Assembly (NCBI GenBank): GCA_965285935.1
Contig: OZ260667.1
Location: 7,936,001 to 8,000,000, forward strand
Source of the DNA: Ophelia neglecta
Taxonomy: Eukaryota
Reading direction: 5' to 3'
Length of the DNA: 64,000 nucleotides
A program made the position numbers and the translations under genes. Position 1 is the stretch's first letter, and every line of letters begins with the position of its first letter. The notes below the pieces were generated by a model. That model was not told where the DNA came from and ran no database searches. It saw only the letters and a program-made list of their open reading frames with translations. Shown piece by piece: positions 6,201 to 50,829 of this stretch.

Positions 6201-6415
6201 AATTCCCCATTGGCATTGAGAGACGGGTTAGATGCCACTTTCTCCATTGCGATTGACACAGCGCTGGCCGATGTTATCCCACTAAACTCAAATTCCATGC
6301 TCCATGGGGCAAGCAGGCCGATCTTGAAATTCCTAGTGCCCCCAGTTAAACGGGTAGCGCAAAGGAACAGGAAACAAAGAAGCAGGAGCCCAGGCATTTT
6401 CTTCTGTGAAGCCAT
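177..6415 (-). CDS. Receptor guanylyl cyclase (natriuretic peptide receptor-like), paralog A; 5' ten exons (signal peptide + extracellular ligand-binding domain), continues beyond window start
   Basis: Phase-consistent GT-AG exons: 6415-6192, 5626-5517, 4381-4189, 3842-3747, 3187-3129, 2215-2097, 1561-1481, 1210-1103, 782(or 794)-638, 307-177. Translation has ANF-receptor motifs ([59 protein letters not shown]). Internal exon sizes match paralog B except exon 9. An alternative in-frame ATG lies at 6439. Confidence 0.93.
1931..2019 (-). other. Tandem duplicate of exon 6 of guanylyl cyclase A (candidate mutually exclusive exon or pseudo-exon)
   Basis: ag|..[29 protein letters not shown]|gt; 89 nt, same phases as the 119-nt exon 2215-2097, with an in-frame 30-nt deletion. 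Confidence 0.7.
3294..3471. mobile_element. MITE family A (Tc1/mariner-pogo type, ~178 bp)
   Basis: TIR aagtgaaacctg...caggtttcactt flanked by TA; internal ggtggtct repeats; at least 6 copies in the window. Confidence 0.85.
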
Positions 6416-9400
6416 TATTTTCTTCGTAGCACCTGGCATAGCTATAAAAGAGGACCAAAACAGCCACAATATAAATTGTCTAAACCGAGGTTTGGCAGAG
6501 CTCTTCTTATAGTTGTAAAGGTAACAAAAAATACCACCAAAGGGCGGGTTAATAGTCAAAAATTTCAGAGAAGAGGTTTGAGAAACCCTCCCCGATCCAC
6601 GACAAAACGTTTGTGATCTCCTCGTCACAGGAATCGTAGTTATGAGGCGCCGATAATGACATAACCCGGAGCACATTGCCTATGTACATAATATTCTGTT
6701 AATGTACCATACATAAGTGTGTGTTCTTGTATCGCCAAAGGCATACAATGGTATTACATTTTACGCCGGCGTCATTAATAGCCTAAAGGCTTGCTCTAAG
6801 CCCCATACGAAATGATATCGACAATAGCCAGCAGACCAATATAACATCATTGCTTACATGATCTCTTACACTTCGAAAAGGAAAATATGATTCTATTGAT
6901 TATCATGTTTGTACGTGAACGAATAAAGTATGGTTATCAAATTTTCAGGCATTTACTTTCAACTGTATATGGAAAAGGTGAAGCACATTCAATTAGGTAA
7001 TTTGTATATTCTAAACATGTCAATAATAATATACATAAATAAACGTATAAACGTAGGCCCTTTTCCTGCTAATAAATTGCAGCCTATGATGTATCCCATT
7101 AAGGCCTCCTGTGATTCAGGTCAGTAATTTGACTATATGCTTATAGAATGCGATTTTTTTTTAAATAAATTTATTAATTAGTCCAACGGCAAAAACCTAA
7201 AACAGGTCAATAAGCAGGCCAACCTTAATAGTTTCGCTAAAAAACACGTTAATTAGCTATAGTGTTTTATTATTATTAAAAGAAGACCATACAGTGCCGA
7301 GATAGGAACAGTAGAAATAAAGCTATGTGACCTATATAAAGTAGGTCAACAAAAATTTAATCAATTAGAAGTCGGGTCATAGGCTACATTCTTACCATAC
7401 GCTTGGATCTACGCATCTTTTTCTGATCAAATGCATTTCTACTTTACTCTTCTTTTACGTTCTCAATTTGTTGGCACGTTTTTTGCAGATAAAAAAAAAT
7501 TCTGCTTGTTTGGCGGCCGGCAAGGATGGTGCTGACAGCAAATGCTATATGTGCTATAATAACATTTCGTTTGGCGATTGGTTTTTTTCAATCAGGTAGA
7601 AAACCGGTTATACCCAGAAACCTGGTGCCGATGGCAGTTTAACAGAAACTAGTAACCGTTTGAATTAGACAGGTAAGGTCGTTTGTGAGCTAGTACAGTT
7701 GCTAGTATTATCATAGCTCAGTAATTTATTACCAGATGGCGTTGCGGGTATTAGGCTATGGATCGGTTATAAATTAACACAACTAAACTTGATTCTATCA
7801 GGAAACCAATCGATCATTAAGATGGGCCAAGGTCAAATGAAGGTCACCATTATACTCCATTAATATATTTATCTTGACCGTTAAGCCATCAGGAGACAGA
7901 GAAAATATCTGTAATCGCAAAGTGACTCTGACGGTAAGTTCAAGATGAATCTCACCACTGAATTCCTTTCATATAAATTCCGATCATTTAGGGGTCAGTA
8001 AATTTTATAGTCCTAGCTTGTAAGGTTACACCATAAGAGTGCACACAAAGTTTAGCTTCAAGACAATTATTGCGTGTTAAATAAAAGTGAAATTAAATAA
8101 CATCAGATTTCTTGTTACAGATTCCCACTATGAACAATGCACCCTTCAGGATCAAACTCGCAATAACGTCAAATGTGTAAATTGTACCTTTGAAAAGATT
8201 CCCAAGGGCAAGTTCATGGTCACGACTGGATTCTTTGCATAGGAATCGTAATCAGTTATTGATATATATATATATATTAGGTACATCAATTTTTTCACCA
8301 TTAAGACACAAAAAGCAATTACAGATTTACTTTAAAGTTAGGAAATTTGCTAATCTCATCATTTTATCAATAAGGCCAAAACGTTAAGCCATATACTATC
8401 TATTTCAAAAAAGGTGGTCACTCTGCACTAGCCTGAACTGTTGGGTTTTGAGGGTTAGATTTTTAGATAAATTTTGATGGATTGGTTAAGGGTTTACAGT
8501 AAAATAAAAGTCCCAGCACCGACTTTATATAAATCGGCTAGCGCTTTGGGGGAAAGTATCAGTTATGAAAATCAAGATGTAAAACATGTTCTTGAAACTT
8601 GCAGCAAAGCAAGTTGTGGTTATGGTTCCGACTTGCTTATTTTCAATTATTGAACCCTTTGGTAATAAAACTAATCAATGACAACCCCCGACACCTACCC
8701 CGGCCGACATTTAATTGCCGCCCCTTGAACATAAGGGACCTTGCCTGTAAGGTGTATTGGTGTCTGACATGTTAATAATGTAGGCTATTTGAAAAGACAA
8801 ATTACAGTTCTGTTTGTGGCATTCGTTTCCATTTATTTCTCTTTTACTGCAAATAAGGTTTACATTTAAATTAGAACCAAACAGGGAATGACACCTTTGC
8901 CAATAAAAATAACACTGTTATATCATTTATTCTGTTGCACAAAATTCATACTAGTAAATTATCACTATTTCATGCCTTAAGTACACTTATGACTACCTTA
9001 TTTCAATTCCATTAGTACATTGATAATTAGTAAGCGCTTAACTTAGAGTAACTAAATATGATATGCAGAAAACTTCACCTAAAACATATCCCAACGTTAT
9101 TAGTTTTTTGTAATGTGTTTTCCAACACCGTTATGACTAATAATAACTAACTAATGTGTTACTTATAAACCACGATCAAATGAAACGGATAATTTTTAGC
9201 CTGCTGCTTATTTCCATATTTATCTAACATACACGTTTGATATACTTCTGTATATACAACTGTTACTTTTAGGATAAAAAGTAGCCCTACTCGCAAATTA
9301 TAACTAAAAGGAACGTTGACAATTAACAGAACTGTAACTCGATGCAAAACTAGCATGTAACATTTCTACTCACTGCCTAAAATTTTCCTTGCTCTCTCTT

Positions 9401-27900: not shown

Positions 27901-30319
27901 CCGAGGAACTGCTTATTAACGTCCCTTATTGCTACCGACAAACACCCATGGTCCGCCCCTTTCTCCCCACAATCACCCCCATGGTCCGCCCCTTTCTTCC
28001 GACAATCACACCAATGGTCCGTCCCTTTCTCACGACAATCACACCCATGTCCCGTCCCTTTCTCCCGACAATCACACTCATGGTCCGTCCCTTTCTTCCG
28101 ACAATCACACCCATGGTCCGCCCCTTTCTCCCGACAATCACTCCCATGGTCCGTCCCTTTCTTCCGACAATCACACCCATGGTCCGCCCCTTTCTCCCGA
28201 CAATCACTCCCATGGTCCGCCCCTTTCTCCCGACAATCACACCCATGTCCCGCCCCTTTCTCCCGACAATCACACCCATGGTCCGCCCCTTTCTCCCGAC
28301 AATCACACCCATGGTCCGCCCCTTTCTCCCGACAATCACACCCATGGTCCGCCCCTTTCTCCCGACAATCACCCCCATGGTCCGCCCCTTTCTCCCGACA
28401 ATCACTCCCATGGTCCGCCCCTTTCTCCCGACAATCACACCCATGGTCCGCCCCTTTCTCCCGACAATCACACCCATGGTCCGCCCCTTTCTCCCGACAA
28501 TCACACCCATGGTCCGCCCCTTTCTCCCGACAATCCCCCCTATGGTCCGCCCCTTTGTTCCGACAATCACACCCATGGTCCGTCCCTTTCTTCCGACAAT
28601 CACACCCATGGTCCGCCCCTTTCTCCCGACAATCACACCCATGGTCCGCCCCTTTCTCCCGACAATCCCCCCTATGGTCCGCCCCTTTCTCCCGACAATC
28701 ACACCCATGGTCCGCCCTTTCTCCCAACAATCACACCCATGGTCCGCCCTTTTCTCCCGACAATCACCCCTATGGTCCGCCCCTTTGTTCCGACAATCAC
28801 ACCCATGGTCCGCCCTTTCTCCCGACAATCACTCCCATGGTCCGCCCCTTTCTCCCGACAATCACACCCATGGTCCGTCCCTTTGTTCCGACAATCACAC
28901 CCATGGTCCGCCCTTTCTCCCGACAATCACTCCCATGGTCCGCCCTTTCTCCCGACAATCACACCCATGGTCCGCCCCTTTCTTCCGACAATCACACCCA
29001 TGGTCCGTCCCTTTCTTCCGACAATCACACCCATGGTCCGCCTCTTTCTCCCGACAATCACACCCATGGTCCGCCCCTTTCTCCCGACAATCACACCCAT
29101 GTCCCGCCCCTTTCTCCCGACAATCACACCCATGTCCCGTCCCTTTCTCCCGACAATCACACCCATGGTCCGCCCCTTTCTTCCGACCCCACACCCATGG
29201 CCCGTTCCTCTCTCCCGACAATCACAGACATCATTCCCCCGATTCTCACAATATTCACAGTGCCCACAAATCTATCCCTGTCCTAATCCTAATACTAATG
29301 ACCGTTTGCCTCGTGCCACCCATACTAACATGATATCCGCCTCCACATAACCTCCGCGTTTAAGCGGTAGGCCCGATTTCTGGAAGCGGTCTTAACATTT
29401 GGGATTTAATTAGCCTATTACCGATTCGCTGAGATCAAGTTGATCGGTGCTTCCATTGAACAGGATTGATTTTAAAATCAAAATGGCTAGGTTTAAGTCC
29501 GAATTTAGCTTACAGAAACCCTGATTAGCCAGTTAAGACCGTTTAAAAACCAGGTCTAGCCGTTATTTGTCTTATTTCAACTTAACAGTACATTAGCCTA
29601 GACCAGATTTTGGGGCCAAAAAAAATTCCCTTTTAAGTCCCCTTCTGATCTTTTAAAAATGTACTAAATCTCTTCGCGGCAAACTGCTGGACCCCCTTGC
29701 AGTTCTGGCACTCATTTTCTCATCACCCAAATTACAGCATGACCACAATGCCTTGGCCACAGCCGATAAAGAAAACGTATTTAAGACACATATGCAATGC
29801 ACCATAACTTATAGGCCTAGCCCTTGCCTGCTAGAGAAATCCCAGAGAACATGCATAATCAATTTGTACATTAATCAGAATGCGTACATTTCAACAACAG
29901 TATTAACTGATGAAGAAGGGTATACTATTATGCGATTTAAATATTAAATATACAGTTGCCATAACCTGTTGAAAGCAGATAGCATTTCAATAACGAGATA
30001 GCTAAATCAATGATTTAACAATGCGATTTGATATTAAAACCGACAAAGTCCACTTGACATTGCCCCAGACATTAGATAATTAACTTACTGAGACCTACCT
30101 GAGTGTGAATTCTCCGTTTGCGTTGAGTCTGGGGTCTGCCGCCACTTTCTCCATGGCGATTGACACAGCACTGGCCGAGGTGATCCCGCTGAACTCATAC
30201 TCCATACTCCATGGTGCCAGCAGGCCGATCTTAAAGTTCCTAGTTCCCTCAGCTATCCCTGCACTGAGAAGCAGAAGACATACATGTAAAACATGTACTT
30301 TTACCACCATTACCTCCAT
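9906..30319 (-). CDS. Receptor guanylyl cyclase (natriuretic peptide receptor-like), paralog B; complete, 29 coding exons, 1091 aa
   Basis: Exons: 30319-30099, 27653-27544, 24712-24520, 23960-23865, 22883-22825, 21747-21629, 20797-20717, 20454-20347, 19867-19732, 19471-19341, 18882-18765, 18489-18405 ([27 protein letters not shown]), 18117-18003, 17621-17555, 17307-17224, 16919-16843, 16332-16228, 15921-15760, 15384-15309, 15163-15014, 14767-14590, 14013-13876, 13022-12899, 12528-12460, 12304-12142, 11980-11870, 11160-11069, 10701-10628, 9939-9906. Sum is 3276 nt, in frame. Domains: pseudokinase ([23 protein letters not shown]), coiled coil ([16 protein letters not shown]), cyclase ([33 protein letters not shown]) with the GTP-specifying Glu and Cys. 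The last micro-exon is less certain. Confidence 0.95.
11329..11562. mobile_element. MITE family C (~200-240 bp, long imperfect TIRs)
   Basis: cagggacctgtatttacaagcggtcttaag...cttaagatcgtttgaaaaacaggttcctg with internal ccattgaccag...atggctagg. Related copies lie near 10160-10310, 30870-31051, 43000-43220 and 45673-45780, in addition to those listed separately. Confidence 0.75.
23199..23438. mobile_element. MITE family C
   Basis: ggggacggtttatggaagcggtgttaa...ttaagacaacttcaagaatctgaccctg. Confidence 0.65.
23984..24161. mobile_element. MITE related to family A
   Basis: aatgaaacctgt...acaggtttcattg|TA; shares the internal aagggactggaaaa motif. Confidence 0.65.
25912..26255 (-). mobile_element. 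tRNA-derived SINE (Meta-SINE-like core)
   Basis: On the minus strand: A-box tagccgagtgttt, B-box gggtcaaatcc, core ggactggtcagcccggtgtcagtataatgtgactgggtgggg...cagtgaggcagcact, tail gatatgaccgataagtgctgaaagccacgtaaaacc. Second copy at 57.2 kb. The family name is from recollection of mollusc SINEs, not from a search. Confidence 0.8.
26868..27513. mobile_element. MITE family C interrupted by a family B insertion
   Basis: gcccggttcctggaagcggtcttaagg...aagaccacaatggc[family B]aatggctatttttaagacc...ttaagaatgcctcccaaacaagggcc. Confidence 0.75.
26989..27386. mobile_element. MITE family B (hAT-like, ~390 bp), nested in a family C element
   Basis: Perfect 15-bp TIR cagggcctgacataa/ttatgtcaggccctg; flanked by aatggc direct repeat; near-identical copy at 59404-59790. 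Confidence 0.9.
27934..29228. repeat. 33-bp minisatellite (~39 copies) in intron 1 of guanylyl cyclase B
   Basis: Unit cccatggtccgcccctttctcccgacaatcaca; it explains the long repetitive ORFs. Confidence 0.97.
29368..29558. mobile_element. MITE family C
   Basis: taggcccgatttctggaagcggtcttaa...ttaagaccgtttaaaaaccaggtcta. Confidence 0.75.
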
Positions 30320-33612: not shown

Positions 33613-34183
33613 CGTTCGCGATAAGAAGGTGTTTTCAGAGGATACTTGTTTACTTTTTATAAACTCCCTTGTTAAAATATCCCACTGAACGCATAAGCCA
33701 GCCATTACGGTTACTCAGGATTCCATCGGTCTCTAAATACTAGTGGCCGACAAACTGCGCCCCAGTTACAATTTCTTCGTAAAAAAGTCGGCCCCAGTAC
33801 CGAATATCATAGCTTTTCACATCTACTTCAGGAAATAATGTTTTGCCAAGTTATAGCTTTGAGTATATATTCATTATCATTACAATAATCGGCCCCGTCC
33901 ATTCAAGGATATTTATTTACCTGGCATATAAAAGGATAACAGATATAAGCGGGCATAAATATGGCGCCGGATATGAACTCCCCCGTTTATTTCCGTATAT
34001 TCTCGTATGTTTAACATATATAATAAAAGACGTAATTTGCAGTGGTCGAATACATGTTTAATCCACGTGTTACTGTGAGGATGTCTATATATTCAGCTTT
34101 ACTATATGACTTTGCCATCCAGTCCCATGACAGACGATTTGTTATCGCTAGGGACTCTGTGACCTTCCTCCGGCCTCTGGAAG

Positions 34184-34340
34184 GGTGCCAGTTCCTCAGG
34201 TTCCATTCTATGTACAGAGACTTTAAATCATATGACAAGCCAGAGGTTCAGAGGGACTTCAACCAGATGTTTGATAAAGCAGTCTTGCCGGGAGGATATC
34301 GCCAGTTAAAGCTCTACAAGTTCAGCAGAAAATACTACTC
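34184..34340 (+). pseudogene. 3'-terminal fragment of the GT77-like glycosyltransferase
   Basis: 34184-34315 matches 50675-50806 with 5 mismatches in 132 nt (LRFHSMYR.FKS.DKPEVQRDFNQMFDKAVLPGGYRQLKL). No upstream GT sequence is present. Confidence 0.9.
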
Positions 34341-36282
34341 GATCGATCATTGCATCATATTGCTTGAAATACTACTCGCTCTCGATCATTGCATCATATT
34401 GTTTGATATACTACTCGATCTCGATCATTGCATCATATTGTTTGAAATACTACTCGATCTCGATCATTGCATCATATTGTTTGAAATACTACTCGATCTC
34501 GATCATTGCAATATATTGTTTGAAATACTACTCGATCTTGATCATTGCATCATATTGTTTGAAATACTACTCGACCTCGATCATTGCATCATATTGTTTG
34601 AAAAAACTACGCGCTCTCGATCATTGCATTATTTTGTTTGAAATACTACTCGATCTCGATCATTGCATCATATTGTTTGAAATACTACTCGATCTCGATC
34701 ATTGCATCATATTGTTTGAAATACTACTCGCTCTCGATCATTGCATCATATTGTTTGATATACTACTCGCTCTCGATCATTGCATCATATTGTTTGAAAT
34801 ACTACTCGCTCTCGATCATTGCATCATATTGTTTGAAATACTACTCGATCTCGATCATTGCATCATATTGTTTGAAATACTACTCGATCGATCATTGCAT
34901 CATATTGTTTGAAATACTACTCGCTCTCGATCATTGCATCATATTGTTTGATATACTACTCGCTCTCAATCATTGCATCATTTTGTTTTTAATACTACTC
35001 GCTCTCGATCATTGCATCATATTGCTTGAAATACTACTCGCTCTCGATCATTGCATCATTTTGTTTGAAATACTACTCGATCTCGATCATTGCATCATAT
35101 TGTTTGAAATACTACTCGCTCGATCATTGCATCATATTGTTTGAAATACTACTCGCTCTCGATCATTGCATCATATTGTTTGATATACTACTCGCTCTCG
35201 ATCATTGTATCATATTGTTTGAAATACTACTCGATCTCGATCATTGCATCATATTGTTTGAAATACTACTCGCTCTCGATCATTGTATCATATTGTTTGA
35301 AATACTACTCGATCTCGATCATTGCATCATATTGTTTGAAATACTACTCGCTCTCGATCATTGCATCATATTGTTTGATATACTACTCGCTCTCAATCAT
35401 TGCATCATTTTGTTTTTAATACTACTCGCTCTCGATCATTGCATCATATTGCTTGAAATACTACTCGCTCTCGATCATTGCATCATTTTGTTTGAAATAC
35501 TACTCGATCTCGATCATTGCATCATATTGTTTGAAATACTACTCGCTCGATCATTGCATCATATTGTTTGAAATACTACTCGCTCGATCATTGCATCATA
35601 TTGTTTGAAATACTACTCGCTCTCGATCATTGTATCATATTGTTTGAAATACTACTCGATCTCGATCATTGCATCATATTGTTTGAAATACTACTCGCTC
35701 TCGATCATTGTATCATATTGTTTGAAATACTACTCGATCTCGATCATTGCATCATATTGTTTGAAATACTACTCGCTCAATCATTGCATCATATTGTTTG
35801 AAATACTACTCGCTCTCGATCATTGCATCATATTGTTTGATATACTACTCGCTCTCGATCATTGTATCATATTGTTTGAAATACTACTCGATCTCGATCA
35901 TTGCATCATATTGTTTGAAATACTACTCGCTCTCGATCATTGTATCATATTGTTTGAAATACTACTCGATCTCGATCATTGCATCATATTGTTTGAAATA
36001 CTACTCGCTCTCGATCATTGCATCATATTGTTTGATATACTACTCGCTCTCAATCATTGCATCATTTTGTTTTTAATACTACTCGCTCTCGATCATTGCA
36101 TCATATTGCTTGAAATACTACTCGCTCTCGATCATTGCATCATTTTGTTTGAAATACTACTCGATCTCGATCATTGCATCATATTGTTTGAAATACTACT
36201 CGCTCAATCATTGCATCATATTGTTTGAAATACTACTCGCTCGATCATTGCATCATATTGTTTGAAATACTACTCGATCATT
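34329..36282. repeat. 39-bp minisatellite (~50 copies) with higher-order variant structure
   Basis: Unit ctcgatcattgcatcatattgtttgaaatactactcg(a/c)t. The variant ctcaatcattgcatcattttgtttttaat recurs at ~34965, ~35392 and ~36049. Confidence 0.97.
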
Positions 36283-37027: not shown

Positions 37028-40000
37028 ATGTCGGGGCTACCTTTTCTGGGTTGTAGTTGGACAATTATTGGGTTGTCCTGCATGTTTGCTATATGTGCGA
37101 ATGGATTAGAAGGTAAGTGATCAGCAGTACTATAAGTGTTAAGAGGGTACTCGTTTACCTAAGAAGAATTCCCTGTGACGACCTGGCCAATCCCTTAACA
37201 GAAGTCAGGAATCATCGGGTTGTGAAACCTGTAAATTGTGACCACCCAAGGAACTGTAAAATGTTGGTCTAATTATGGAGGTGGTCTGTTTAGACAAGTT
37301 ATTTTACATTGAAAGTGCAAAGTAGGGTCTTCGTATTAGTGGTCTGAATTGAAAGGTGGTCTGAATATAGAGGTGGTCTTTAAGGCAGATTTCACTGTAC
37401 TAGTATAGTAGCCCGACTTGCTTGCTACGACTGGGAGTGTTATGGACTAAGTGGCCCAAGGACAGCGTGTCTTAGATGGGGACGCACTATTACAAGAATA
37501 CTATTAAGGGGTGGTCATTTACTTTGGAGGGGGAGGGGCGCAAATCCTGAGGGGGGTCCAAGAATTGTGACACAATCTGTTGGGCGGGCGGGCGAGGGGG
37601 GGGGGGCACAAAATTCGGTTCGTATGTAGGGCGGAGGGTCATAAAACCATACACCCGTGACATTAATATATTATAATAATCTTGCTTCCTTTTCATTCCA
37701 TGCAGCACCCCTTCAGGTATAAATGTCACATTTTGAAGGTGCGCAAATAAAAATGTGGGCTCAGGGAACAATCAAAATTAAACCTGGTAAAGTAGATGGG
37801 GGGGCGGGTTAAAACAATCAGCGGGATCTCGTATTGGAGGGGTCATAGTGATTCAGTAGAAGACTACTAATCAGGGGTGGTCATTTACTTTGGAGGGGGG
37901 GGGGGGGTCAAAGTATTCTGACACCATCTGATGGGCGGGCGCGGGGGTGGGGGTCCCAAATTGTGCCCCATCCCCCTCGTATGGAGGCTAAAAAGTTTAG
38001 TAAAGGAAGTGGTCGAATAAACGTTTATTCCATGTGTTACTGTGGAAATGCAATGACTATTAAGAATGGACGGATATTTATAACTTTCGAAATTCTTAGA
38101 ACTGTGTGTCGTTCGGACCCTCAGATCTTTAGCACCGGACTTGAAATTCTTGTTTATATTTTCCCCGGTCTCAAATTAATGGTATCTTAATCTACTTGAT
38201 TACAAATTTGGGCCACACTAGTCTCGTGTGGGGGACATTTAAACCTGTATCCCTTCTCACCAGACCCTAAGTGAATGCGCTGCTTGAGTTATTATGTCTC
38301 TCCGGCTTGTGGGACAACGGTCATATACAAATATATAGGCTTTGCCCTTCATACTGTTTTTTCAATGATCACATCATCTTGTTTGCAGATGTCAATAACA
38401 CCTGGATACGAAGTAATGATACAGGGGGTTGTTATACATTAATCAAAACGAGACTGTCTTGGTTTGATGCCAGGGATTACTGTATTTCACAGGGAGCATC
38501 ACTAGCATCAACCACTTCACCGGAGGAATTTCAAGTTATTCTAAGTAGGTATCATTATGGTTGGAATACAAACTGAAACATATTTTAATCCATTCCGTTT
38601 GGTAACAAGCAAAAGGCCATTCAAACTTGGTAAATCACAATTTTGGAAAAGAAGAATGGCTAGTAGGGTAAGATTATGCTTTACGCAGAGGTCTTTAGCC
38701 TGCTATAGCCCATCTCTGTGAATCTTTAGTGAGTGTGGCAAATGGAAAATTTTATGGGTCCAACGTGTACCCAGACAGGAATTGATTCAATGTATTACAA
38801 AACATAACAGCTTGTGTCATTACTTGCACACCCTTTACGATACACACTTACTATTGAACTCTTTTTAGTTTTGGAGGAGAAAATAGTCAAGTTTATCGGA
38901 TAGTAGCCAACTCTTAACTAAGGTCAAATTGAATTGAAGAATCATGAATTCTACCCACATTTTGAAAAGAAATTACGACAGTCGTAATTACTCATTTGTT
39001 TATGATGTAAAATTTCCCCATAGATTTAGACGGGTTATCATTCAACGAATCGCGGACGTATTGGCTTGGTGGAAATGATTTTACCACTGACGGACAATGG
39101 ACCTGGGCGGATGGTAGTCCGATGGGACCTTGGATGAAATGGCACGCAGGTGAGTTGTGGCGCAACACACATTAAACAACATAAATGTGAATTGCTATTT
39201 ATTCGTATAAATGAATATTTTTGGTACAACACACATTAAACAACATAAATGTGAATTCATATTTATTCGTATAAATAAATATTTATGGCACAACACTCAT
39301 TAAACAACATAAATGTGAATTCATATTTATTCGTATAAGTAGATATTTATACTTATAAAAGTAATAAGATGCGACGGTCATATTATTTTTTATTATTAAA
39401 GTATTGGTTTACTGAAAAGGTCGACAAGATTATCATCTTTTTCGGACCTATGATCTAATTACGCGTTTTTATCTACGCACAGGTGAGCCAAACAATACTG
39501 GACAAGGACAGTACTGTGTGGTTTTAAGGTTAGATGATGAGGCTGGATGGAGTGCCGTGGAATGTGCGGGGAATGTAAATCCCTTCGTTTGTTTCATTAC
39601 AGGTGAATATCGCAATTTTAGACATGCATGCCACGGTAGAAATATTGTGGAATAAGTAGGAATGCAATAACTGACAAAGCTAGTATAGCCACTCTCCCCA
39701 TAAATAGAAAAGGATTCTTCAATTCTATAATGAATAGGGTAAATAAGAATAATTTCTCTTTCAATTCCTTTGCATTAAACAAGATTGTTAATGGTAAACG
39801 CAGTTTATAAATATATTTATAGTCAGTTCTGGCATGATACCACAGTGGCGGATTCAGGGGGGGGCCCTTTGCAAAAAGTGGGCCTGGACCAGGGCCTATT
39901 TCTGGACCCACGCAAGGTGCTTTTCCAGAGGGTTGGTAACGGGGACAATCCAGACATTTGCCTTGTCAGCCTTGGAAAATTTTGCCTCCCACCCCCCTTC

Positions 40001-43000
40001 CTATAATACTTGATCCGCCACTGTACCGTTTTAACAAAATACTGCACATCTTTATTTTAACACCTAAATGCAGCCGATATAGATCTTGTTGATGGTTCGA
40101 GTCCATCCGAGGGCCGTGTTGAAGTATATCGTAACGGTTCGTGGGGGACTGTTTGTGATGACTACTGGGATGATTTAGATGCTAGGTATTGTGAAATACC
40201 ATACACGTTTCAAATAAACCCGCAGACAAAATATATCATAAAAATGATATTTTGTTCAAATCTTAATGAAGTCAGAAGGGGCTAATTTTATATTCCAGCG
40301 TTGTGTGTAGAGAGATGGGCTACAGCGGAGGGAAAGCAACACAAGGAGGGCACTTTGCACAAGGCACTGGGATAATCTGGTATGACAATGTGCGTTGTAA
40401 TGGGACAGAACGTTCTCTGGCCCATTGTCCAAAACGAAGTCTTGGTGTGCATGACTGTCTGCATTGGGAAGATGCAGGTGTGATATGCCAAGGTAATGGA
40501 ACATTCTTTTACCTTCTAATCCATCAACCCACCTCCAAAAAAAAATCGGTATTGCAATTTTAAGAAATGTTATTCAAAAATGTTATTTTTACTATATTTA
40601 CACCTCTTGTTGTGGCCATTGACCTGTTTTCCAAGTTGTATATGAGTAACTAAGGATGTCTTATTGTGCCTGTTTTAGACTCTCTGGACAATAATGTAAC
40701 GTGCCGACCCTCCAAGCCTGGGTTGAAGCTAACTACTGAATTATCGGCAATGACAACTACCACAAGCCAATTAATTACTTCATCGCTTGCCTCAGGTACA
40801 CCGCATTAACAAAACAAGCATGTCTTATTTATTAGATTTCAACGTCGATATAGATATATAATTATTCATGCTCTTTATTCAAAGAAAATATGTTCCCTTT
40901 GTTTGCTAAATTGTCGATAGAAATACAATTTATAGCTTCATCGGAAAGCAGTCTCGCCGTTGTTAAATCAACCGATCCAAGCCAAACATTGCCGCCCGGT
41001 AGGTCTCCATAACAATTGCCAGAACTACATATCTGCTACCACCTCAAGTGAATTAGTATTAAGCAAACACCCGTATTCATATTTCATATGAATATCAATA
41101 CACATTTCTAAAACAAAAAGCCTAACCACGTTTTGCCATCATAGTTATAGTGACACAAGTGGCTCCCTCACACGGACCCATATCAGGAGGCACTGCGCTG
41201 ACCATTCAAGGAACTGGCCTCCTAAATTGGCGACTGGCAGCGGCCAGAATAGGAACTCATCAAATTGCAAACATCACGTGGTATTTAATCATATCCTAAA
41301 TACATATAAATGTGGTTATTAATTAAAGAAAAAAAATGATATGAATCATATCGGATTTTTCTCTCCCTCTCGCAAGCGCGTCTAAATAAGGACTTTAATA
41401 GAATGGAACATTTTAAAACCCAACGTCTATTTAGCATCCATGTATGACGTTATAAGGATGTCACACATTAGTAACCAACTAAATAAAATTAACCAAATCG
41501 TATCTTTTTATTCACAAAGAGTTTGAATAAATACAAGCAAATATAAAACGACCGACAAAATGAAGTGATAAAATTTGTTATATTTTCTTAGGCTTGCCAA
41601 CGGTATTTTACTATTCACGCCTAGAGGAAGTGAGACGTATAAAGATTTTAAAATTTTCTTGGTATTGACTGACGGGTCAGTCATTGATACTCAGTTTTCT
41701 TTCACCTACAAACCTGACCCGCAAATATCAGAAATTCACCCACTAGAAACTATAACCAGGTACTCCGCTATACTTTACAATTTGAGAAGTATGGGATATT
41801 GGCTTATTAATGAAGTTCATTCAAATACGTTTCCTACAAAAATGAATCCACACCAGGTCCTAAACGTACTACTGCCTAAATTTAATACTGTGTTCGATGA
41901 AGCAAGAAAATGTGCACAAACTACTTAAGCACATTAGATCGACCCCACCAGAATGATAAAAATTAAAAAAAAATATCCGGTAATGAACTCATCAACTTGA
42001 TAGCATTATTTTCCTCTTCCCTAGTGGCGGTACAAAGTTAACAGTACAAGGAAAGTATTTAGATTCGGTAGCCGACCCAGACCTACTGATGACTCTTTCG
42101 GCTAGAGACAAACAGTCTTTGAAACAGAATTTGGAATTGACTAGTGTAAGTGTTGTTTGGAATATAAAACTGTTTAGCGAATGTCTTTGAGTTGAATGTT
42201 TCTCAACATTGAAGCAGCTACACTGTATCTTTAGGTGACATAAGAAGTCAATACAATACATAAAGTCTCGTAATGGCACGAAATTAAGTAAAACGCCTTT
42301 TTAAATATGTTATCTGCAGCAATGCGAAAAAGAAACTGTTAAGTTCAACAAGATGTTCTGTCAGACTCCAAACACGACAGGCTACATCAGGCAGGATGAT
42401 ATAGACTTCTACGAGTTGTATATAGGGTTGAAACTGGATGGAGTGCCTACATACAGGAATCTGTCGGCCACACTACCACAATATTCTCAACTACAGGTCT
42501 TTAGGGATCCTGTGCCTGAGAATTTTGCCGAGGAAAAGTTAATTGAATCCGGGAAACCGCTGGTCATTGAAGTACGTTTCAAAGTATAGGCCTATATTTT
42601 TTTCATATTTCTCACCATGACTTGTTAATTCATAATTAAAATCTACTATCAATAAATTCTATACATTGTAAAGAAGATTGAATGATGAATGGGCAATTAA
42701 AGTCAAAAACTACAATGACGTGACAAAGAAGCTAATTTTATTTTCAACGAAGGGCGAATCACTGAGCAAGGGATGTAGTATGGATGACTACAAGATTACT
42801 ATAGGTCATGGTCGCTGCCATGTTGAAGAGTTGCTAGACAATGAAGTGCGCTGTTGGCCGCCAGAAACTTCACCACAACAAAAACCTGATGAGCGACAAC
42901 TGGGAGACAACAAATTTAACCTTTTGGTAAGGGAACATTCTGATACTTAAAGTAAAACGTCAATCTAAACATATATACTAAACAATAAGATTGGACTACC

Positions 43001-44042
43001 ATAGAGAAGTAGTCCCAACTCTTAACTCGTATTAAAATCAGGATTAAGTCGGTCTCATCTTGCTAAACATGGCTTTTGGAAACTATGTTTGGTCTTAAAC
43101 TTAGCCAATATTGTCTTAAACTTAACCCCGGTCAGTGGAAAGTTACAGCAACACCAATTGACCAAATTATAGTAGGCTTATCTGATCCAGGAACTTACGA
43201 CTGCTTAAAGAATCTGGGGCTAACTAATCAATTATTTCATGGATTGGTGTTGAATTGAAGTTGATTTTCATCATGCACAAAAATGACCTCAATACACAGT
43301 GTTATTGCAGGTACAAGTCGGGTACAGCGCCGTTCATCAACTTGGTATTGTCTATTACTACAAGGATAATACTGTTCTGTACGTCATCATTGGGTGCTCA
43401 GTCGCTGCCGTGCTGGTCATTCTAATGGCAGTCATCGCCTGTGTCTTAATTAAGAAGAGATACAAGCCCGGCGCATACAGTGAGAGGACAATGGGAGATG
43501 GTGAAGTCTTGGAAGGTCCACTGGACATTACCAGTGGAGGAAATGACATGAATCTCTCTGGACAGAACAGCAGACCAGAGAACTCAATTGGTCATTACAA
43601 TCAAAGTTTGGCGATTTCGAGTGGACACACTAGCTTCAACGAATACGGTGGAGAAAATCCTAGAATAGCGTCTAAAGATGAACACGATCCTAACGGTTAT
43701 CCCATTGGGAAGCGACAAAGACAGGAAAATGAAGAAGGGTATCTACCACCCCTAGGAAGACCAACAAAGAGGTATTTACCCGAGGGGGGCAACTCACTGC
43801 CGAACTGGGTAAATGATTCAGACGGGGTCTACGAGTCTAGATCACAAAGAGAATGGTCAGGACAGCCGCACCGAAATCATGCGGCTGGATCAGGCATGAT
43901 AGCATCAAACAGTAATATGAAATGGCACACTGCTGGACTACCCAGGGTTACCAAAATGGCTCGCGCTGTCAATCAACGAAGGAGGCTGCCTCGAGATGGG
44001 GCCAGGCCAGATCCCTTAACTTTCGATGATGAATATTATTGA
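37028..44042 (+). CDS. Type I membrane receptor: signal peptide, C-type lectin domain, SRCR domain, S/T-rich linker, 3 IPT/TIG (plexin-like) domains, TM, ~200-aa cytoplasmic tail; 14 exons, 851 aa
   Basis: Exons: 37028-37112, 38389-38544, 39024-39149, 39483-39602, 40074-40185, 40299-40492, 40679-40795, 40936-40998, 41145-41280, 41592-41759, 42025-42145, 42320-42571, 42753-42926, 43311-44042. All GT-AG, 2556 nt, in frame. CTLD motifs: CY...[31 protein letters not shown] motifs: [43 protein letters not shown] motifs: [40 protein letters not shown]....CWPP. TM: [26 protein letters not shown] followed by KKR. Confidence 0.9.
37221..37397. mobile_element. MITE family A
   Basis: gtgaaacctgtaaattgtgaccacc...gcagatttcactg|TA; absent from the paralogous remnant at ~33730. 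Confidence 0.8.
37505..37995. repeat. G-tract-rich interspersed repeat, related copy at ~63110-63540
   Basis: Shared tgacac..tctg.tgggcggg, gggtcataaaacca..cacccgtga and ttccatgca.caccc; internal re-start ggggtggtcatttactttggaggggg at ~37874. Confidence 0.6.
39163..39340. repeat. 64-bp tandem repeat (~2.7 copies), intronic
   Basis: caacacacattaaacaacataaatgtgaatt... starts at 39163, 39227 and 39291. Confidence 0.9.
39843..40023. mobile_element. MITE family D
   Basis: TIR cagtggcggat/atccgccactg; core gggcctatttctggacccacgcaag...ggggacaatccagacatttgcctt. Confidence 0.85.
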
Positions 44043-48081: not shown

Positions 48082-50829
48082 CTTGGCGAGTGAAGGTGTT
48101 ATGGCGGATGCTGTTAATAATGACCATCCAATGTGCGTTTCTTCTGTTTCCCGCTAGAAAGTGGTTAGGAGACTTTCCTGCAAGTGGGAATAATGGTAAG
48201 TAACTCGGCCCTGTCACTCAACATGTTTAATATGATTCTTCGTATTGATTATCGCAAGTAATGGACAGTGAAACCTGTGAATTAAGACCACCCAGGGACT
48301 GATAAATACTGGTCTGATTACAGAGGTGGTCTGTTTACAAAGGTTATTTTAGATTGAAAGAGTATACTGTGGTCTTTACATAGTGGTCTGAATTGGCAGG
48401 TGGTCTGATTTTAGAGGTGGTCTTTAAGTCAGGTTCACTGTATATTATTTTTGTAAACTTTGATGAGGGTGACGGCATGGAAACGGTAGAATTGGATTCC
48501 AGATTCGAGGGGGAGGGGGGGGGGGGGATAACCTCACCCCCACCCTGCCTTCAGAATTGTACAACCGTCGTCTAAAATCTTTTTCCTGAGTAGGTTTATG
48601 AATTTTACTTAGCAAGTAAAACATGCAAGATATTCATAAAATGGTTATTCCTAACCATCACAGGCATAGGTTACATTATTTCGGAAGTTATTTATGCCCC
48701 AGACATGCTTAAAGCCCTTGCAAGGGTAATTAAATTATAAAACTTACAACTGCAGTGTACATACAAGCAATGTGCGAATTAAACGATATGCCTGCTACTT
48801 AGAAAACTGCAAAGGGCCTATCAAATAAAGATGCCAGTGCTTTGGGAATTTAAACTATATTTGGCATGATCTAAAACTAACAACCCTTGAGAGGCAAATA
48901 TGTTGTTATAATTCCGACTCTTCTACTAACTATGGCTTATTCCAAATCCGACCTTACAAGTCTTGTGAACGAATGACTGAAAATTCACTATTATCAGTTG
49001 CGATCACACTAAATCGTATCATATTTTGAAGAGCTTAGGTTGTTTATCTAAGAAAGACTTTAGCTAACTATTTGAAAGAGATTTTATGTAACTGTTTGTG
49101 TAGTTTATTAAGTAATTGGAAGGTCAATGAAAAGCTCCGGCTACTGTTGGTGCCTCTCTGACTGTCAATGAGCCACAGGCCACCTCAAGCCTCAGAGCGC
49201 ATGCGCGGGGACTCAACAGCTTGATGGGAATTTAACAGGGAGGGTCGCCTATGCTGGGTAAGGTCAGATGGAAACTGAACAGAGGGGCAGTCGAGATGTA
49301 GCGAGATAATTGAACGGACTTGTTGGTGTGGAACTGTGTTTCGGCATGAATCGTCACAATATGCTTTGTTTTGATAACCAGTTTATTAAGATACTTTCTT
49401 ATTCCATTTAGAATTTATACCACAACAAACTGATGTGTTGTCAGAAAATCAAATGTCATTTACGGTGATAAGAGCAAGACCATTTGTGGCAGAAGTAAAG
49501 AAGAGAGTGAACCGTCATGGGTTCATCATAATCCCCGCGGTGATAGACCACGCTTATGTGGACATGGCGCGGAACTTCTATGAAAGCAGCATTAAGCGGT
49601 TACAGTTAGAAAACAACACCCTCTTCGTGTGTGCGGAACAGGACGCCTGTGACGAGGCACAACGTCAGGGACTCCCTGTTTATCTGTACAAGGACATCGC
49701 AAGGTCATCCGGACTGTTTGGTTCCAAGGAATTCATTCAGAAGGAGACGATTAAGCTGGATGTGATAAACGAAATCATCAATTCCGGGCATGGTGTACTA
49801 CTCACAGATTTGGATATGTTCTGGTTCAAGTCACCAATTGATGACGTGATTAAAAATTGTGGAGACAAGGACTTTGTTGTTCAAAATGAAACCTTTAACA
49901 CTGATTTGAACATCGGTTTCATGTACATACGCCCCACCCGGGCGTCCAAGAACTTGTTCAAAAAGATGATGCGATTTTCAGGTTCAGAATGCGCTCAAGA
50001 CATTTTCAACAAATTTGTCCGAACCCATAAAAGCAGATTGAAATATAAAGTTCTTAGTGTAGATGCCTACCCAAATGGTGTAACATATTTTGAGACTCAC
50101 GGGCGTATTTTGAGAGGTCAGAATCCGTGTGAACAATGTTTATTGGTTCATAATAACTGGATCGTTGGGACAGAGGCCAAAGTTTTCCGGTTTAAAGAGC
50201 ACCACATGTGGTATTTGGACGACAAGGGCTATTTTTCTGATCCTAATGCCAGGTACCTCGTGTATGAGAACGTGTTAGGGCCATCGGGCACCGAGAATAT
50301 AACTGCTCTGGAGAGGGGTGTGTTGAAAGGTGCATTGGCCATTGCAAAAATACTTAACAGGACCCTCATCCTCCCACAGAGATTTCACTCTAAAAACCGC
50401 GAAGTTACCGCTTTAAACGGAATTTTGATTATAAAAGTCTTTGATAAATACTTCAATCATTCGTATCGGGAGAGCACATTTCTTGATCACTCTTTGGTAC
50501 CCTTACATGTAAAGAAAGGGGAATGCGGCCCCTTGCTCATCAAAAACAATTTTTCCCAATCCACTTTCCCAGATGAAGAACAAAATATGAGGACTGTTTT
50601 TCAGCCTAATGATATGGAGAATGGAGCGATGGAGGGAGAAATACGGAACTGGTTGACTAGTACACCGTTTGTTAGGTGCCAGGTCCTCAGGTTCCATTCC
50701 ATGTACAGAGTCTTTAAATCATTTGACAAGCCAGAGGTTCAGAGGGACTTCAACCAGATGTTTGATAAAGCGGTCTTGCCGGGAGGATATCGCCAGTTAA
50801 AGCTCTTTCGTGTTAAGCAGAAATTGTAA
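48082..50829 (+). CDS. GT77-like nucleotide-diphospho-sugar transferase (type II Golgi glycosyltransferase, GT-A fold) with C-terminal extension
   Basis: Large exon 49412-50829 contains DXD (LLTDLDMFW), LNIGFMYIRPT, Q..FN, YPNG..YF, VHNNW and ALAIAKILNRTLILP. A phase-compatible upstream exon 48082-48195 encodes a signal-anchor (WRVKVLWRMLLIMTIQCAFLLFPARK). The start is uncertain: in-exon ATG 48108, or micro-exon ATGAAGT|gtaagt at 47743-47749. Confidence 0.85.
48266..48440. mobile_element. MITE family A
   Basis: cagtgaaacctgtgaattaagaccacc...caggttcactg|TA. Confidence 0.85.

What the first reader, a model, noticed from the sequence alone, without database searches (positions are those of the whole stretch)
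37028..44042. Chimeric receptor: C-type lectin + SRCR head on a plexin-type IPT stalk, with no GAP or kinase domain
Seen: a clean 14-exon ORF with SP-CTLD-SRCR-S/T linker-IPT x3-TM-tail. Known: tandem IPT domains just before a TM, ending in ITIG..C.V.....CxPP...VQVG.....LG.V.Y, resemble the stalk of plexins and MET/RON, which normally have an N-terminal Sema domain and a cytoplasmic GAP or kinase. Here two pattern-recognition modules, bounded by phase-1 introns (typical of exon shuffling), replace Sema/PSI. Inference: a lineage-specific glycan or microbe sensor built on a plexin stalk. I do not recognise this architecture from any characterised protein.
Basis: partly seen in the sequence, partly recalled or inferred. 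Interest (0 to 1): 0.8.

Follow-up and report, generated by a model that had tools for sequence, protein, structure and literature searches.

The report
Lectin-SRCR receptor on MET-type stalk
This is a real, intact 14-exon gene of a probably annelid invertebrate, encoding a surface receptor with a C-type lectin and a scavenger-receptor domain on a MET/plexin-type stalk and no enzyme domain; it is one of about 27 related genes that share the stalk, the layout was not found in public data, and its function is untested.

Summary
Window 37028-44042 (+) contains 14 GT-AG exons that read as one 851-codon frame: signal peptide, C-type lectin domain (3 exons), SRCR (2 exons), Ser/Thr-rich linker, three IPT/TIG units, a transmembrane helix and a 196-aa tail. 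There is no kinase or GAP.

The gene is not a one-off chimera:
- Its stalk exons have 26 paralogues in the same genome, in clusters on contigs C12 and C8.
- At least six of these, probably seven, keep the same lectin-SRCR-IPT order.
- Others carry lectin-only or EGF heads.

This conserved order is the main argument that head and stalk belong to one gene. No RNA data exist.

The stalk is closer to IPT stalks of invertebrate MET-family receptor kinases than to plexins. The nearest named relatives are from Owenia and Ptychodera, and four kinase loci in this genome also match.

The lectin domain keeps EPN but has lost WND and one N-terminal cysteine, so classical calcium-dependent sugar binding is doubtful.

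The tail shares a conserved GYLxP tyrosine motif with its paralogues.

No protein with this layout turned up among 1.84 billion representatives or in the literature. The scan already noted the same family 349 kb downstream (s1-735123).

Verdict: a new variant of a known kind, of moderate interest.

The parts
37028..37112 (+). Exon 1: start codon and signal peptide (aa 1-29); a phase-1 intron follows.
   Evidence: ATG at 37028, donor GAAG|gtaagt. Hydrophobic peak at aa 6-24. Weak match to the first exon of paralogue L023.
38389..38544 (+). [quoted passage not shown] The first cysteine of the long-form pair is replaced by Val; its partner Cys43 is polymorphic with Trp.
   Evidence: Lectin_C positions 2-31, 19.8 bits. 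Paralogues have CxxxW...C. SNP 38432 T>G.
39024..39149 (+). [quoted passage not shown]
   Evidence: Lectin_C positions 37-64, 15.9 bits. 34-61% identical to paralogue exons.
39483..39602 (+). [quoted passage not shown] EPN is present, WND is replaced by WSA, and the site Glu is Gln.
   Evidence: Lectin_C positions 72-105, 15.6 bits. Motif comparison with paralogues.
40074..40185 (+). Exon 5: first third of the SRCR domain; a phase-2 intron lies inside the domain.
   Evidence: SRCR positions 1-32, 38.9 bits, E 1.1e-9.
40299..40492 (+). Exon 6: rest of the SRCR domain (six cysteines in all, group-A-like).
   Evidence: SRCR positions 34-100, 62.7 bits, E 4.4e-17. Cysteine positions.
40679..40795 (+). 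Exon 7: Ser/Thr-rich linker, a symmetric phase 1-1 exon (predicted only).
   Evidence: Open frame and splice sites. S+T+P fraction 0.44 over aa 266-335. No homology support.
40936..40998 (+). Exon 8: Ser/Thr-rich linker, a symmetric phase 1-1 exon (predicted only).
   Evidence: Open frame and splice sites. No homology support.
41145..41280 (+). Exon 9: start of IPT unit 1. An alternative acceptor at 41151 would remove two residues.
   Evidence: TIG positions 3-44, 26.8 bits. 40-58% identical in paralogues.
41592..41759 (+). Exon 10: end of IPT unit 1 and first strand of IPT unit 2.
   Evidence: 36-58% identical and collinear in 20 paralogues.
42025..42145 (+). Exon 11: IPT unit 2 ([10 protein letters not shown] start motif).
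   Evidence: Collinear paralogue matches. No Pfam hit of its own.
42320..42571 (+). Exon 12: end of IPT unit 2 and start of IPT unit 3. This is the best-conserved exon of the family.
   Evidence: 26 paralogous exons, 45-73% identical. With the profile, 27 members score 92 bits or more, then a gap.
42753..42926 (+). Exon 13: core of IPT unit 3 (ITIGHGRC...RCWPP).
   Evidence: TIG positions 29-63, 14.1 bits. Profile A2 finds the same family.
43311..44042 (+). Exon 14: last strand of IPT unit 3, the transmembrane helix (about aa 632-657), a 196-aa cytoplasmic tail with the GYLPP and [12 protein letters not shown] motifs, and the stop codon.
   Evidence: Hydrophobic peak KD 3.12 at aa 637. Tail alignment with paralogues. 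No catalytic domain.

Best explanation
The locus is one intact gene for a type I membrane receptor. Its domain order is signal peptide, C-type lectin domain, group-A-like SRCR domain, mucin-like linker, three IPT units, one transmembrane helix and a disordered 196-aa tail without any enzyme domain.

It belongs to a lineage-specific family of about 27 genes, tandem clusters on two chromosomes of a probable annelid. The family keeps one stalk-transmembrane cassette and carries different heads, joined at phase-1 introns (exon shuffling). The cassette is related to the IPT stalk of invertebrate MET-family receptor tyrosine kinases.

Inferred, not shown:
- The head binds an extracellular ligand (microbial, glycan or protein).
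- The rigid stalk holds the head away from the membrane.
- The signal passes through the conserved tail tyrosine (GYLxP, a pYxxP-type SH2 site) after phosphorylation by a separate kinase.
- In this copy the lectin domain probably does not bind sugar through the classical calcium site.
For: - One frame across 14 GT-AG exons, 851 codons, no internal stop.
- Collinear Pfam matches for Lectin_C, SRCR and TIG.
- The same exon order lectin, SRCR, IPT on one strand within 5-8 kb in six paralogues (L021, L022, L025, L026, L029, L030), and weakly in L039. Heads are only 35-63% identical, so the joint arrangement has been kept through old duplications.
- 27 family members at 92 bits or more with the exon-12 profile, then a gap to 51 bits. 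The exon-13 profile finds the same set.
- EGF heads upstream of two paralogous stalks. A CUB-like, EGF and fn3 head sits on a homologous kinase-less stalk in another organism's contig, L042.
- Stalk relatives are kinases. Owenia CAH1793778.1 (Ephrin_rec_like-TIG-kinase, kinase nearest MET/RON) and Ptychodera XP_070544682.1 match collinearly to exons 9-13. Four kinase loci in this genome score above the plexins.
- The window holds no kinase-like exon.
- The tail motifs GYLxP and [12 protein letters not shown] are shared with paralogues.
- In independent DNA contigs of the species, all six indels lie in introns or the 3' UTR, and pN/pS is 0.44.
Against: - There is no transcript evidence at all. 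No RNA run holds the locus, and the three runs found are DNA.
- Linker exons 7 and 8 and the second IPT unit have no independent support.
- The three Lectin_C pieces are each below Pfam's cut-off.
- This copy has lost WND, a calcium-site Glu and one long-form cysteine, and Cys43 is polymorphic with Trp. pN/pS of 0.44 is only moderate constraint.
- Ligand, signalling partner, tissue and any immune role are all inferred.
- The spliced protein could not be searched or folded as a whole.
Confidence: 0.6

Rival explanations
1. Kinase-less partner or decoy of the MET-like receptor kinases. The shared IPT stalk lets the protein pair with an IPT-bearing tyrosine kinase of the same genome. The lectin-SRCR head would then supply ligand recognition and the kinase the signal, or the protein would sequester the kinase or its ligand.
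For: - The stalk exons are homologous to exons lying 2-6 kb upstream of MET-like kinase exons at C1:120.81, C1:122.89, C8:64.53 and C8:47.44 Mb.
- One such kinase locus may lie inside the family's C12 cluster (exon-13 profile 27.6 bits at C12:8784019, a kinase exon at C12:8794633).
- The tail has no enzyme domain of its own.
Against: - Similarity between family and kinase stalks is low (20-50 bits against 92-167 bits within the family). Nothing suggests co-evolving pairs.
- No interaction was tested.
- A tail motif conserved across paralogues argues for signalling of its own.
Confidence: 0.15
2. The protein is an adhesion or matrix-organising protein (cell-cell, cuticle, chaetae or mucus interface) rather than a microbe sensor. 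The family's head diversity would reflect tissue-specific matrix ligands.
For: - Heads in the family include EGF and calcium-binding EGF, and CUB-like, EGF and fn3 in L042. These are typical of adhesion and matrix proteins.
- The lectin domain lacks the full sugar site.
- A mucin-like linker is present.
Against: - Tandem expansion, fast-diverging heads and high allelic amino-acid polymorphism (15 nonsynonymous SNPs in 2.5 kb) are more typical of recognition receptors.
- A characterised crab receptor with SRCR and lectin domains mediates phagocytosis (PMC6716108).
Confidence: 0.15
3. The model wrongly joins two genes: a secreted lectin-SRCR protein (exons 1-6) and a separate IPT-transmembrane protein (exons 9-14).
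For: There are no RNA data. Exons 7 and 8, which link the halves, have no homology support.
Against: - The same order and strand recur in six to seven diverged paralogues.
- Exon 6 ends in phase 1 with a strong donor and no stop. Exon 9 starts in phase 1 and has no start codon or signal peptide of its own.
- Exon 6 can join exon 9 in frame even if exons 7 and 8 are skipped.
Confidence: 0.05
4. The gene is a decaying copy, intact by chance but under relaxed constraint and on its way to becoming a pseudogene in a birth-and-death family.
For: - WND and the first long-form cysteine are lost, while paralogues keep W-x-D and the cysteine pair.
- Cys43/Trp is polymorphic, and exon SNP density is at least as high as in introns.
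Against: - All 14 exons are open with canonical splice sites.
- None of the six indels seen in other haplotypes touches coding sequence.
- pN/pS is 0.44, below 1.
Confidence: 0.1

Closest known systems
CTL-SRCR-IPT receptor family noted earlier by this scan in the same genome (s1-735123, 349 kb downstream)
   Same: Same domain order, same stalk exon structure and the same tail motif. My own searches recover those loci as paralogues (C12:8.35 and 8.36 Mb).
   Different: This is a separate, solitary copy, about 240 kb from the next member. It is 58-73% identical in exon 12, and its lectin site is more degenerate.
Owenia fusiformis receptor protein-tyrosine kinase CAH1793778.1 (UniRef A0A8J1UNS8) and Ptychodera flava XP_070544682.1
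   Same: Collinear similarity to stalk exons 9-13 at 31-53% identity. Both are type I receptors with IPT units before the membrane, and the head is not Sema (Ephrin_rec_like in Owenia).
   Different: They carry a MET/RON-like tyrosine kinase. The window gene has a non-catalytic tail and a lectin-SRCR head.
MET/RON receptor tyrosine kinases (Sema-PSI-IPTx4-kinase), present in annelids and molluscs (PMC6374515)
   Same: IPT units directly before the transmembrane helix, with the cysteine pattern C...CxPP in the last unit.
   Different: No Sema, PSI or kinase here, and three rather than four IPT units. The exon-12 profile finds no PDB chain at all, including human MET.
Plexins (Sema-PSI/IPT ring-RasGAP)
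   Same: IPT/TIG fold next to the membrane.
   Different: No Sema, PSI or Plexin_cytopl. The two plexin genes of this genome score 19 bits (E about 1) or nothing with the stalk profiles.
Bark-type scavenger-receptor-like protein SpBark of the crab Scylla paramamosain (PMC6716108)
   Same: Type I membrane protein that combines SRCR and C-type lectin domains. It has been shown to bind LPS and promote phagocytosis, which makes it a functional analogue for the proposed role.
   Different: Three SRCR domains plus one lectin domain and no IPT stalk. No sequence relationship was tested.
Vertebrate class A scavenger receptors and SRCL/CL-P1 (from general knowledge)
   Same: An SRCR or C-type lectin head on an extended stalk, with a short non-catalytic tail.
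   Different: Type II orientation, a collagenous coiled-coil stalk, and one head type per protein.

Membership tests
Plexin | [quoted passage not shown] | tested here: not met
   The N-terminus is a signal peptide followed by a lectin domain; no exon matches Sema or PSI. Sema exons of this genome lie elsewhere.
Plexin | Cytoplasmic RasGAP domain (Plexin_cytopl, PF08337) | tested here: not met
   The tail has no Pfam domain. PF08337 matches only two loci, both on contig C1.
Plexin | Membrane-proximal IPT/TIG repeats | tested here: met
   TIG in exon 9 (26.8 bits) and exon 13 (14.1 bits).
MET/RON receptor tyrosine kinase | Cytoplasmic tyrosine kinase domain | tested here: not met
   No kinase hit in the tail. 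tblastn with two IPT kinases finds no kinase-like exon anywhere in the 64-kb window.
MET/RON receptor tyrosine kinase | Sema-PSI head | tested here: not met
MET/RON receptor tyrosine kinase | Stalk homologous to the IPT stalk of MET-family kinases | tested here: met
   Collinear matches of exons 9-13 to the Owenia and Ptychodera IPT kinases. Kinase loci in this genome score above the plexins. No detectable sequence match to human MET.
C-type lectin-like domain superfamily | CTLD fold signature (four core cysteines, WIGL-type motif) | tested here: met
   Three collinear partial Lectin_C matches cover profile positions 2-105. Each is below the cut-off and together they total 51 bits. Cys60, 134, 150, 159 and YWLGG are present.
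C-type lectin-like domain superfamily | Canonical calcium/carbohydrate site (EPN or QPD plus WND and the site Glu) | tested here: not met
   EPN is present. WND is WSA and the Glu is Gln. Paralogues keep W-x-D.
SRCR superfamily, group A | SRCR domain with six cysteines, encoded by more than one exon | tested here: met
   SRCR at 38.9 and 62.7 bits in exons 5 and 6. Six cysteines at aa 190-263.
Class A scavenger receptors / SRCL | Type II orientation with a collagenous or coiled-coil stalk | tested here: not met
   N-terminal signal peptide and C-terminal transmembrane helix (type I). The stalk is IPT; no collagen repeats.
Stalk-sharing receptor family of this genome (about 27 genes) | Homologous exons 9-14 with the same exon structure; shared tail motif | tested here: met

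The most novel reading that the evidence does not exclude
The roughly 27 kinase-less stalk genes and the IPT-bearing MET-like kinases of this genome form a modular two-part recognition system. Interchangeable heads (lectin-SRCR, lectin, EGF and others) sit on a common stalk, and that stalk docks onto kinase-bearing relatives. This would be an animal counterpart of plant receptor-like-protein and receptor-like-kinase pairs, built from the MET/plexin stalk.
Probability: 0.1. Interest if true: 0.8.

Novelty: new variant of a known kind. Interest (0 to 1): 0.45.

Why it matters
The IPT stalk of the MET/plexin superfamily is usually seen only with a Sema head and an enzyme tail. Here it has been reused in one lineage as a general chassis for recognition heads without any enzyme.

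This gives a clear natural example of exon shuffling at phase-1 introns, followed by tandem expansion. It adds a candidate innate-recognition receptor family to annelids, whose immune receptors are poorly known. It also raises a testable question: how does a kinase-less MET-type stalk signal?

It remains an uncharacterised predicted gene. Novel domain combinations are common in marine invertebrate genomes, and the family had already been noted by this scan.

Tried and rejected
- RNA evidence. The look-up of sequencing runs lists no RNA run. The three runs that hold the locus cover introns and exons alike and show no intron-skipping joints, so they are DNA.
- PDB sequence search with the exon-12 profile: no chain at E up to 10.
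- Word search with the last exon (transmembrane helix plus tail): nothing at E up to 0.001. This covers only proteins of 134-425 aa.
- Small tree of exons 9-11 from 21 family members: many gaps, no support values, implausible midpoint root. Not used.
Profile scores by position were used instead.
- Contigs around other public exon-12-like fragments:
  - P0122 was withheld and P0068 gave no DNA.
  - L041 and L043 show only an exon-12-like exon and a weak exon-9 match.
- Literature. Four-term and five-term searches gave no paper on this architecture. 'TIG' hits in three immunome papers were the word 'tight'.
- A PAN/apple-like look of exons upstream of paralogue L034 got no Pfam support.
- Ser/Thr-rich linker exons were seen between SRCR and IPT in only two of six paralogues at my threshold.
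- Exons were searched one by one by reference. Exon coordinates were concatenated only inside local scripts. This was done to check the frame, classify SNPs and list residue features, and, for stalk exons 9-11 only, to build the local tree alignment.
Full report
**Observation**

Stop-free segments on the + strand and their flanking splice signals define 14 exons between 37028 and 44042. All have AG acceptors and GT donors. A local frame check gives 2556 nt with no internal stop and a terminal stop, which is 851 aa.

Intron phases are 1,1,1,1,2,1,1,1,2,2,0,0,0. Exon 9 has two acceptors six bases apart (41145 and 41151). Both keep the frame.

Exons were searched singly by reference, and the joined search step is left out. 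Exon coordinates were concatenated only inside local scripts. This was done to check the frame, classify SNPs and list residue features. Stalk exons 9-11 were also joined locally for the tree alignment.

**Domains (Pfam, exon by exon)**

- Lectin_C: profile positions 2-31, 37-64 and 72-105 in exons 2, 3 and 4 (19.8, 15.9 and 15.6 bits). They are collinear, but each is below the cut-off on its own.
- SRCR: positions 1-32 and 34-100 in exons 5 and 6 (38.9 and 62.7 bits).
- TIG: exon 9 (26.8 bits) and exon 13 (14.1 bits).
- Tail: no catalytic or other domain.

Hydrophobic peaks mark a signal peptide (aa 6-24) and one transmembrane helix (around aa 637-655). The tail is 196 aa. Residues 266-335 are 44% Ser, Thr or Pro. 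The SRCR has six cysteines and is split over two exons, which from general knowledge is the group A pattern. Three IPT units fit the about 305 aa between exon 9 and the membrane. The second unit rests only on its [10 protein letters not shown] start motif and spacing.

**One gene or two?**

No RNA run holds the locus. The three runs that do hold it cover introns and exons alike, without intron-skipping joints, so they are DNA.

The best available evidence is comparative. Exon 12 has 26 paralogous copies in the window's own 762-Mb assembly. With a profile, 27 members score 92-167 bits, and then there is a gap to 51 bits. An exon-13 profile recovers the same set. The copies cluster on C12 (7.1-9.5 Mb, where the window lies) and on C8.

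In 10 kb upstream of 20 paralogous stalks, the window's head exons match in the same order and on the same strand (lectin, SRCR, IPT) in L021, L022, L025, L026, L029 and L030, and weakly in L039. These copies are only 35-63% identical in the head, so the joint arrangement has survived old duplications. Exon 6 ends and exon 9 begins in phase 1. The stalk part has no start codon or signal peptide of its own.

**Family context**

- Other paralogues have a lectin domain without a detectable SRCR (L023, L024 with two lectin domains, L032 and L033), or EGF and calcium-binding EGF exons (L031 and L040, Pfam).
- For several paralogues I saw no recognisable head.
- In a contig of another organism (L042, ENA ERZ25069296), a collinear stalk with the same exon pattern follows CUB-like (sub-threshold), EGF and fn3 exons and a Thr-rich stretch. 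It then runs into a transmembrane helix, with no kinase exon in the next 9 kb.

Kinase-less IPT-stalk receptors with varied heads are therefore not confined to this genome. The lectin-SRCR head was seen only here.

**Origin of the stalk**

An exhaustive profile search of 1.84 billion representative proteins with exon 12 gave 117 hits, none below 1e-30. Nearly all are short single-exon fragments. The proteins of 250 aa or more that match the stalk exons collinearly have TIG only or TIG plus a tyrosine kinase, and none of the ten long hits scanned has Lectin_C or SRCR.

The named ones are Owenia fusiformis CAH1793778.1 (Ephrin_rec_like-TIG-kinase) and Ptychodera flava XP_070544682.1. The Owenia kinase is closest to MET and RON among solved structures. 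No plexin is among the named or domain-scanned hits.

In the window's own genome, the stalk profiles give these outgroup matches:

| Locus | Exon-12 profile (bits) | Exon-13 profile (bits) | What lies there |
|---|---|---|---|
| C1:120.81 Mb | 49.8 | 43.5 | 2-6 kb upstream of MET-like kinase exons |
| C1:122.89 Mb | 38.6 | 37.9 | 2-6 kb upstream of MET-like kinase exons |
| C8:64.53 Mb | 32.5 | 31.8 | 2-6 kb upstream of MET-like kinase exons |
| C8:47.44 Mb | 19.7 | 27.4 | 2-6 kb upstream of MET-like kinase exons |
| Plexin gene at C1:0.23 Mb | 19.1 (E about 1) | no match | Plexin_cytopl exons 2.4 kb downstream |
| Plexin gene at C1:104.57 Mb | no match | no match | Plexin_cytopl exons |

No Sema exon was detected beside these kinase loci. 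The stalk is therefore better described as MET-kinase-type than plexin-type. MET and Met-like kinases are known in annelids and molluscs (PMC6374515), but that survey covered only Sema-bearing proteins.

**Details that bear on mechanism**

*Lectin domain.* It keeps EPN, but the WND triplet reads WSA and the calcium-site Glu is Gln. Paralogues show EPN..WYD, QPK..WHD, EPS..WTD and QPD..WLD. Paralogues also have the long-form cysteine pair (CxxxW...C). This copy has Val for the first cysteine, and its partner Cys43 is Trp in the DNA contigs of other reads. Classical calcium-dependent sugar binding is therefore doubtful for this copy.

*Tail.* It shares a GYLxP tyrosine motif with most paralogues and a C-terminal [12 protein letters not shown] motif with three of them. 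From general knowledge, pYxxP is a class of SH2-binding site, and that is the basis of my proposed signalling route. It is inference only. No relative of the tail was found in the public protein set within the word search's length range.

*Polymorphism.* Of 25 exonic SNPs, 10 are synonymous and 15 nonsynonymous, giving pN/pS of 0.44. All six indels lie in introns or the 3' UTR. The gene is under constraint, though not strong constraint.

**Organism**

The only named relatives are from Capitella (for the neighbouring PF03407 glycosyltransferase gene) and from Owenia and Ptychodera (for the stalk). This fits the 'probably annelid' label in earlier notes of the scan but does not prove it.

**Comparison and novelty**

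The protein fails the defining tests for plexins (no Sema, PSI or GAP) and for MET/RON (no Sema or kinase). It qualifies as a CTLD and SRCR superfamily member.

The closest characterised analogue in function is the crab receptor SpBark. It is a type I protein with three SRCR domains and one lectin domain, and it mediates phagocytosis (PMC6716108). It has no IPT stalk.

Neither the exhaustive protein search nor the literature searches showed this domain order. The scan itself had already reported the same family 349 kb downstream (s1-735123). It also has first-reader notes, not followed up, on stalk genes with other heads (s1-739823, s1-732055). I confirmed the stalk exon of the latter at C12:5.993 Mb.

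I rate this a new variant of a known kind. It is a real and neat case of exon shuffling on a MET-type stalk within an expanded family, but it lacks expression or function data, and novel domain combinations are common in marine invertebrates.

Noticed in passing
window 27935-29226: GC-rich 33-bp minisatellite, about 39 copies, 91% matches. It is open in several frames and explains the GC peak and strong negative GC skew at 28-30 kb.
   Followed up: partly
window 34042-36276: A 39-bp minisatellite of about 50 copies lies at 34330-36276. It is preceded at 34042-34330 by a fragment copy of the 3' end of the glycosyltransferase ORF at 49435-50829 (same C-terminal peptide).
   Followed up: partly
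window 49435-50829 (+): Single-exon 464-aa nucleotide-diphospho-sugar transferase (PF03407). Best public relatives are 46-48% identical and unnamed; the only named one is from Capitella teleta (29%).
   Followed up: partly
window 39776-40169 (intron 4 of the gene): Very high-copy repeat. Summed word depth is 36,000-92,000 in the DNA contigs of three runs, against about 25 elsewhere, with many G/C-run joints and loose ends.
   Followed up: no
G000:C2:104.6-105.5 Mb (own genome, outside the window): Six loci with related stalk exons (exon-13 profile 51-61 bits, exon-12 profile 26-35 bits). They appear to be a second, more distant stalk family whose heads and tails were not examined.
   Followed up: no
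G000:C12:8784019-8794791 (own genome, outside the window): An exon-13-like exon (27.6 bits) lies 10 kb upstream of a MET-like kinase exon on the same strand, inside the C12 cluster of the kinase-less family. It may be a kinase-bearing relative next to its kinase-less kin.
   Followed up: no
L042:6494-11089 (ENA ERZ25069296, ctg18087): A gene of another organism with CUB-like, EGF and fn3 exons, a Thr-rich stretch, a collinear IPT stalk and a transmembrane helix. Exons 13 and 14 are fused, and no kinase exon follows within 9 kb.
   Followed up: partly
window 6188-6676 (-): A 162-aa open frame whose second half looks like a signal peptide followed by a conserved-looking extracellular start. It has no Pfam match and is possibly the first exon of a receptor gene on the minus strand.
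   Followed up: partly
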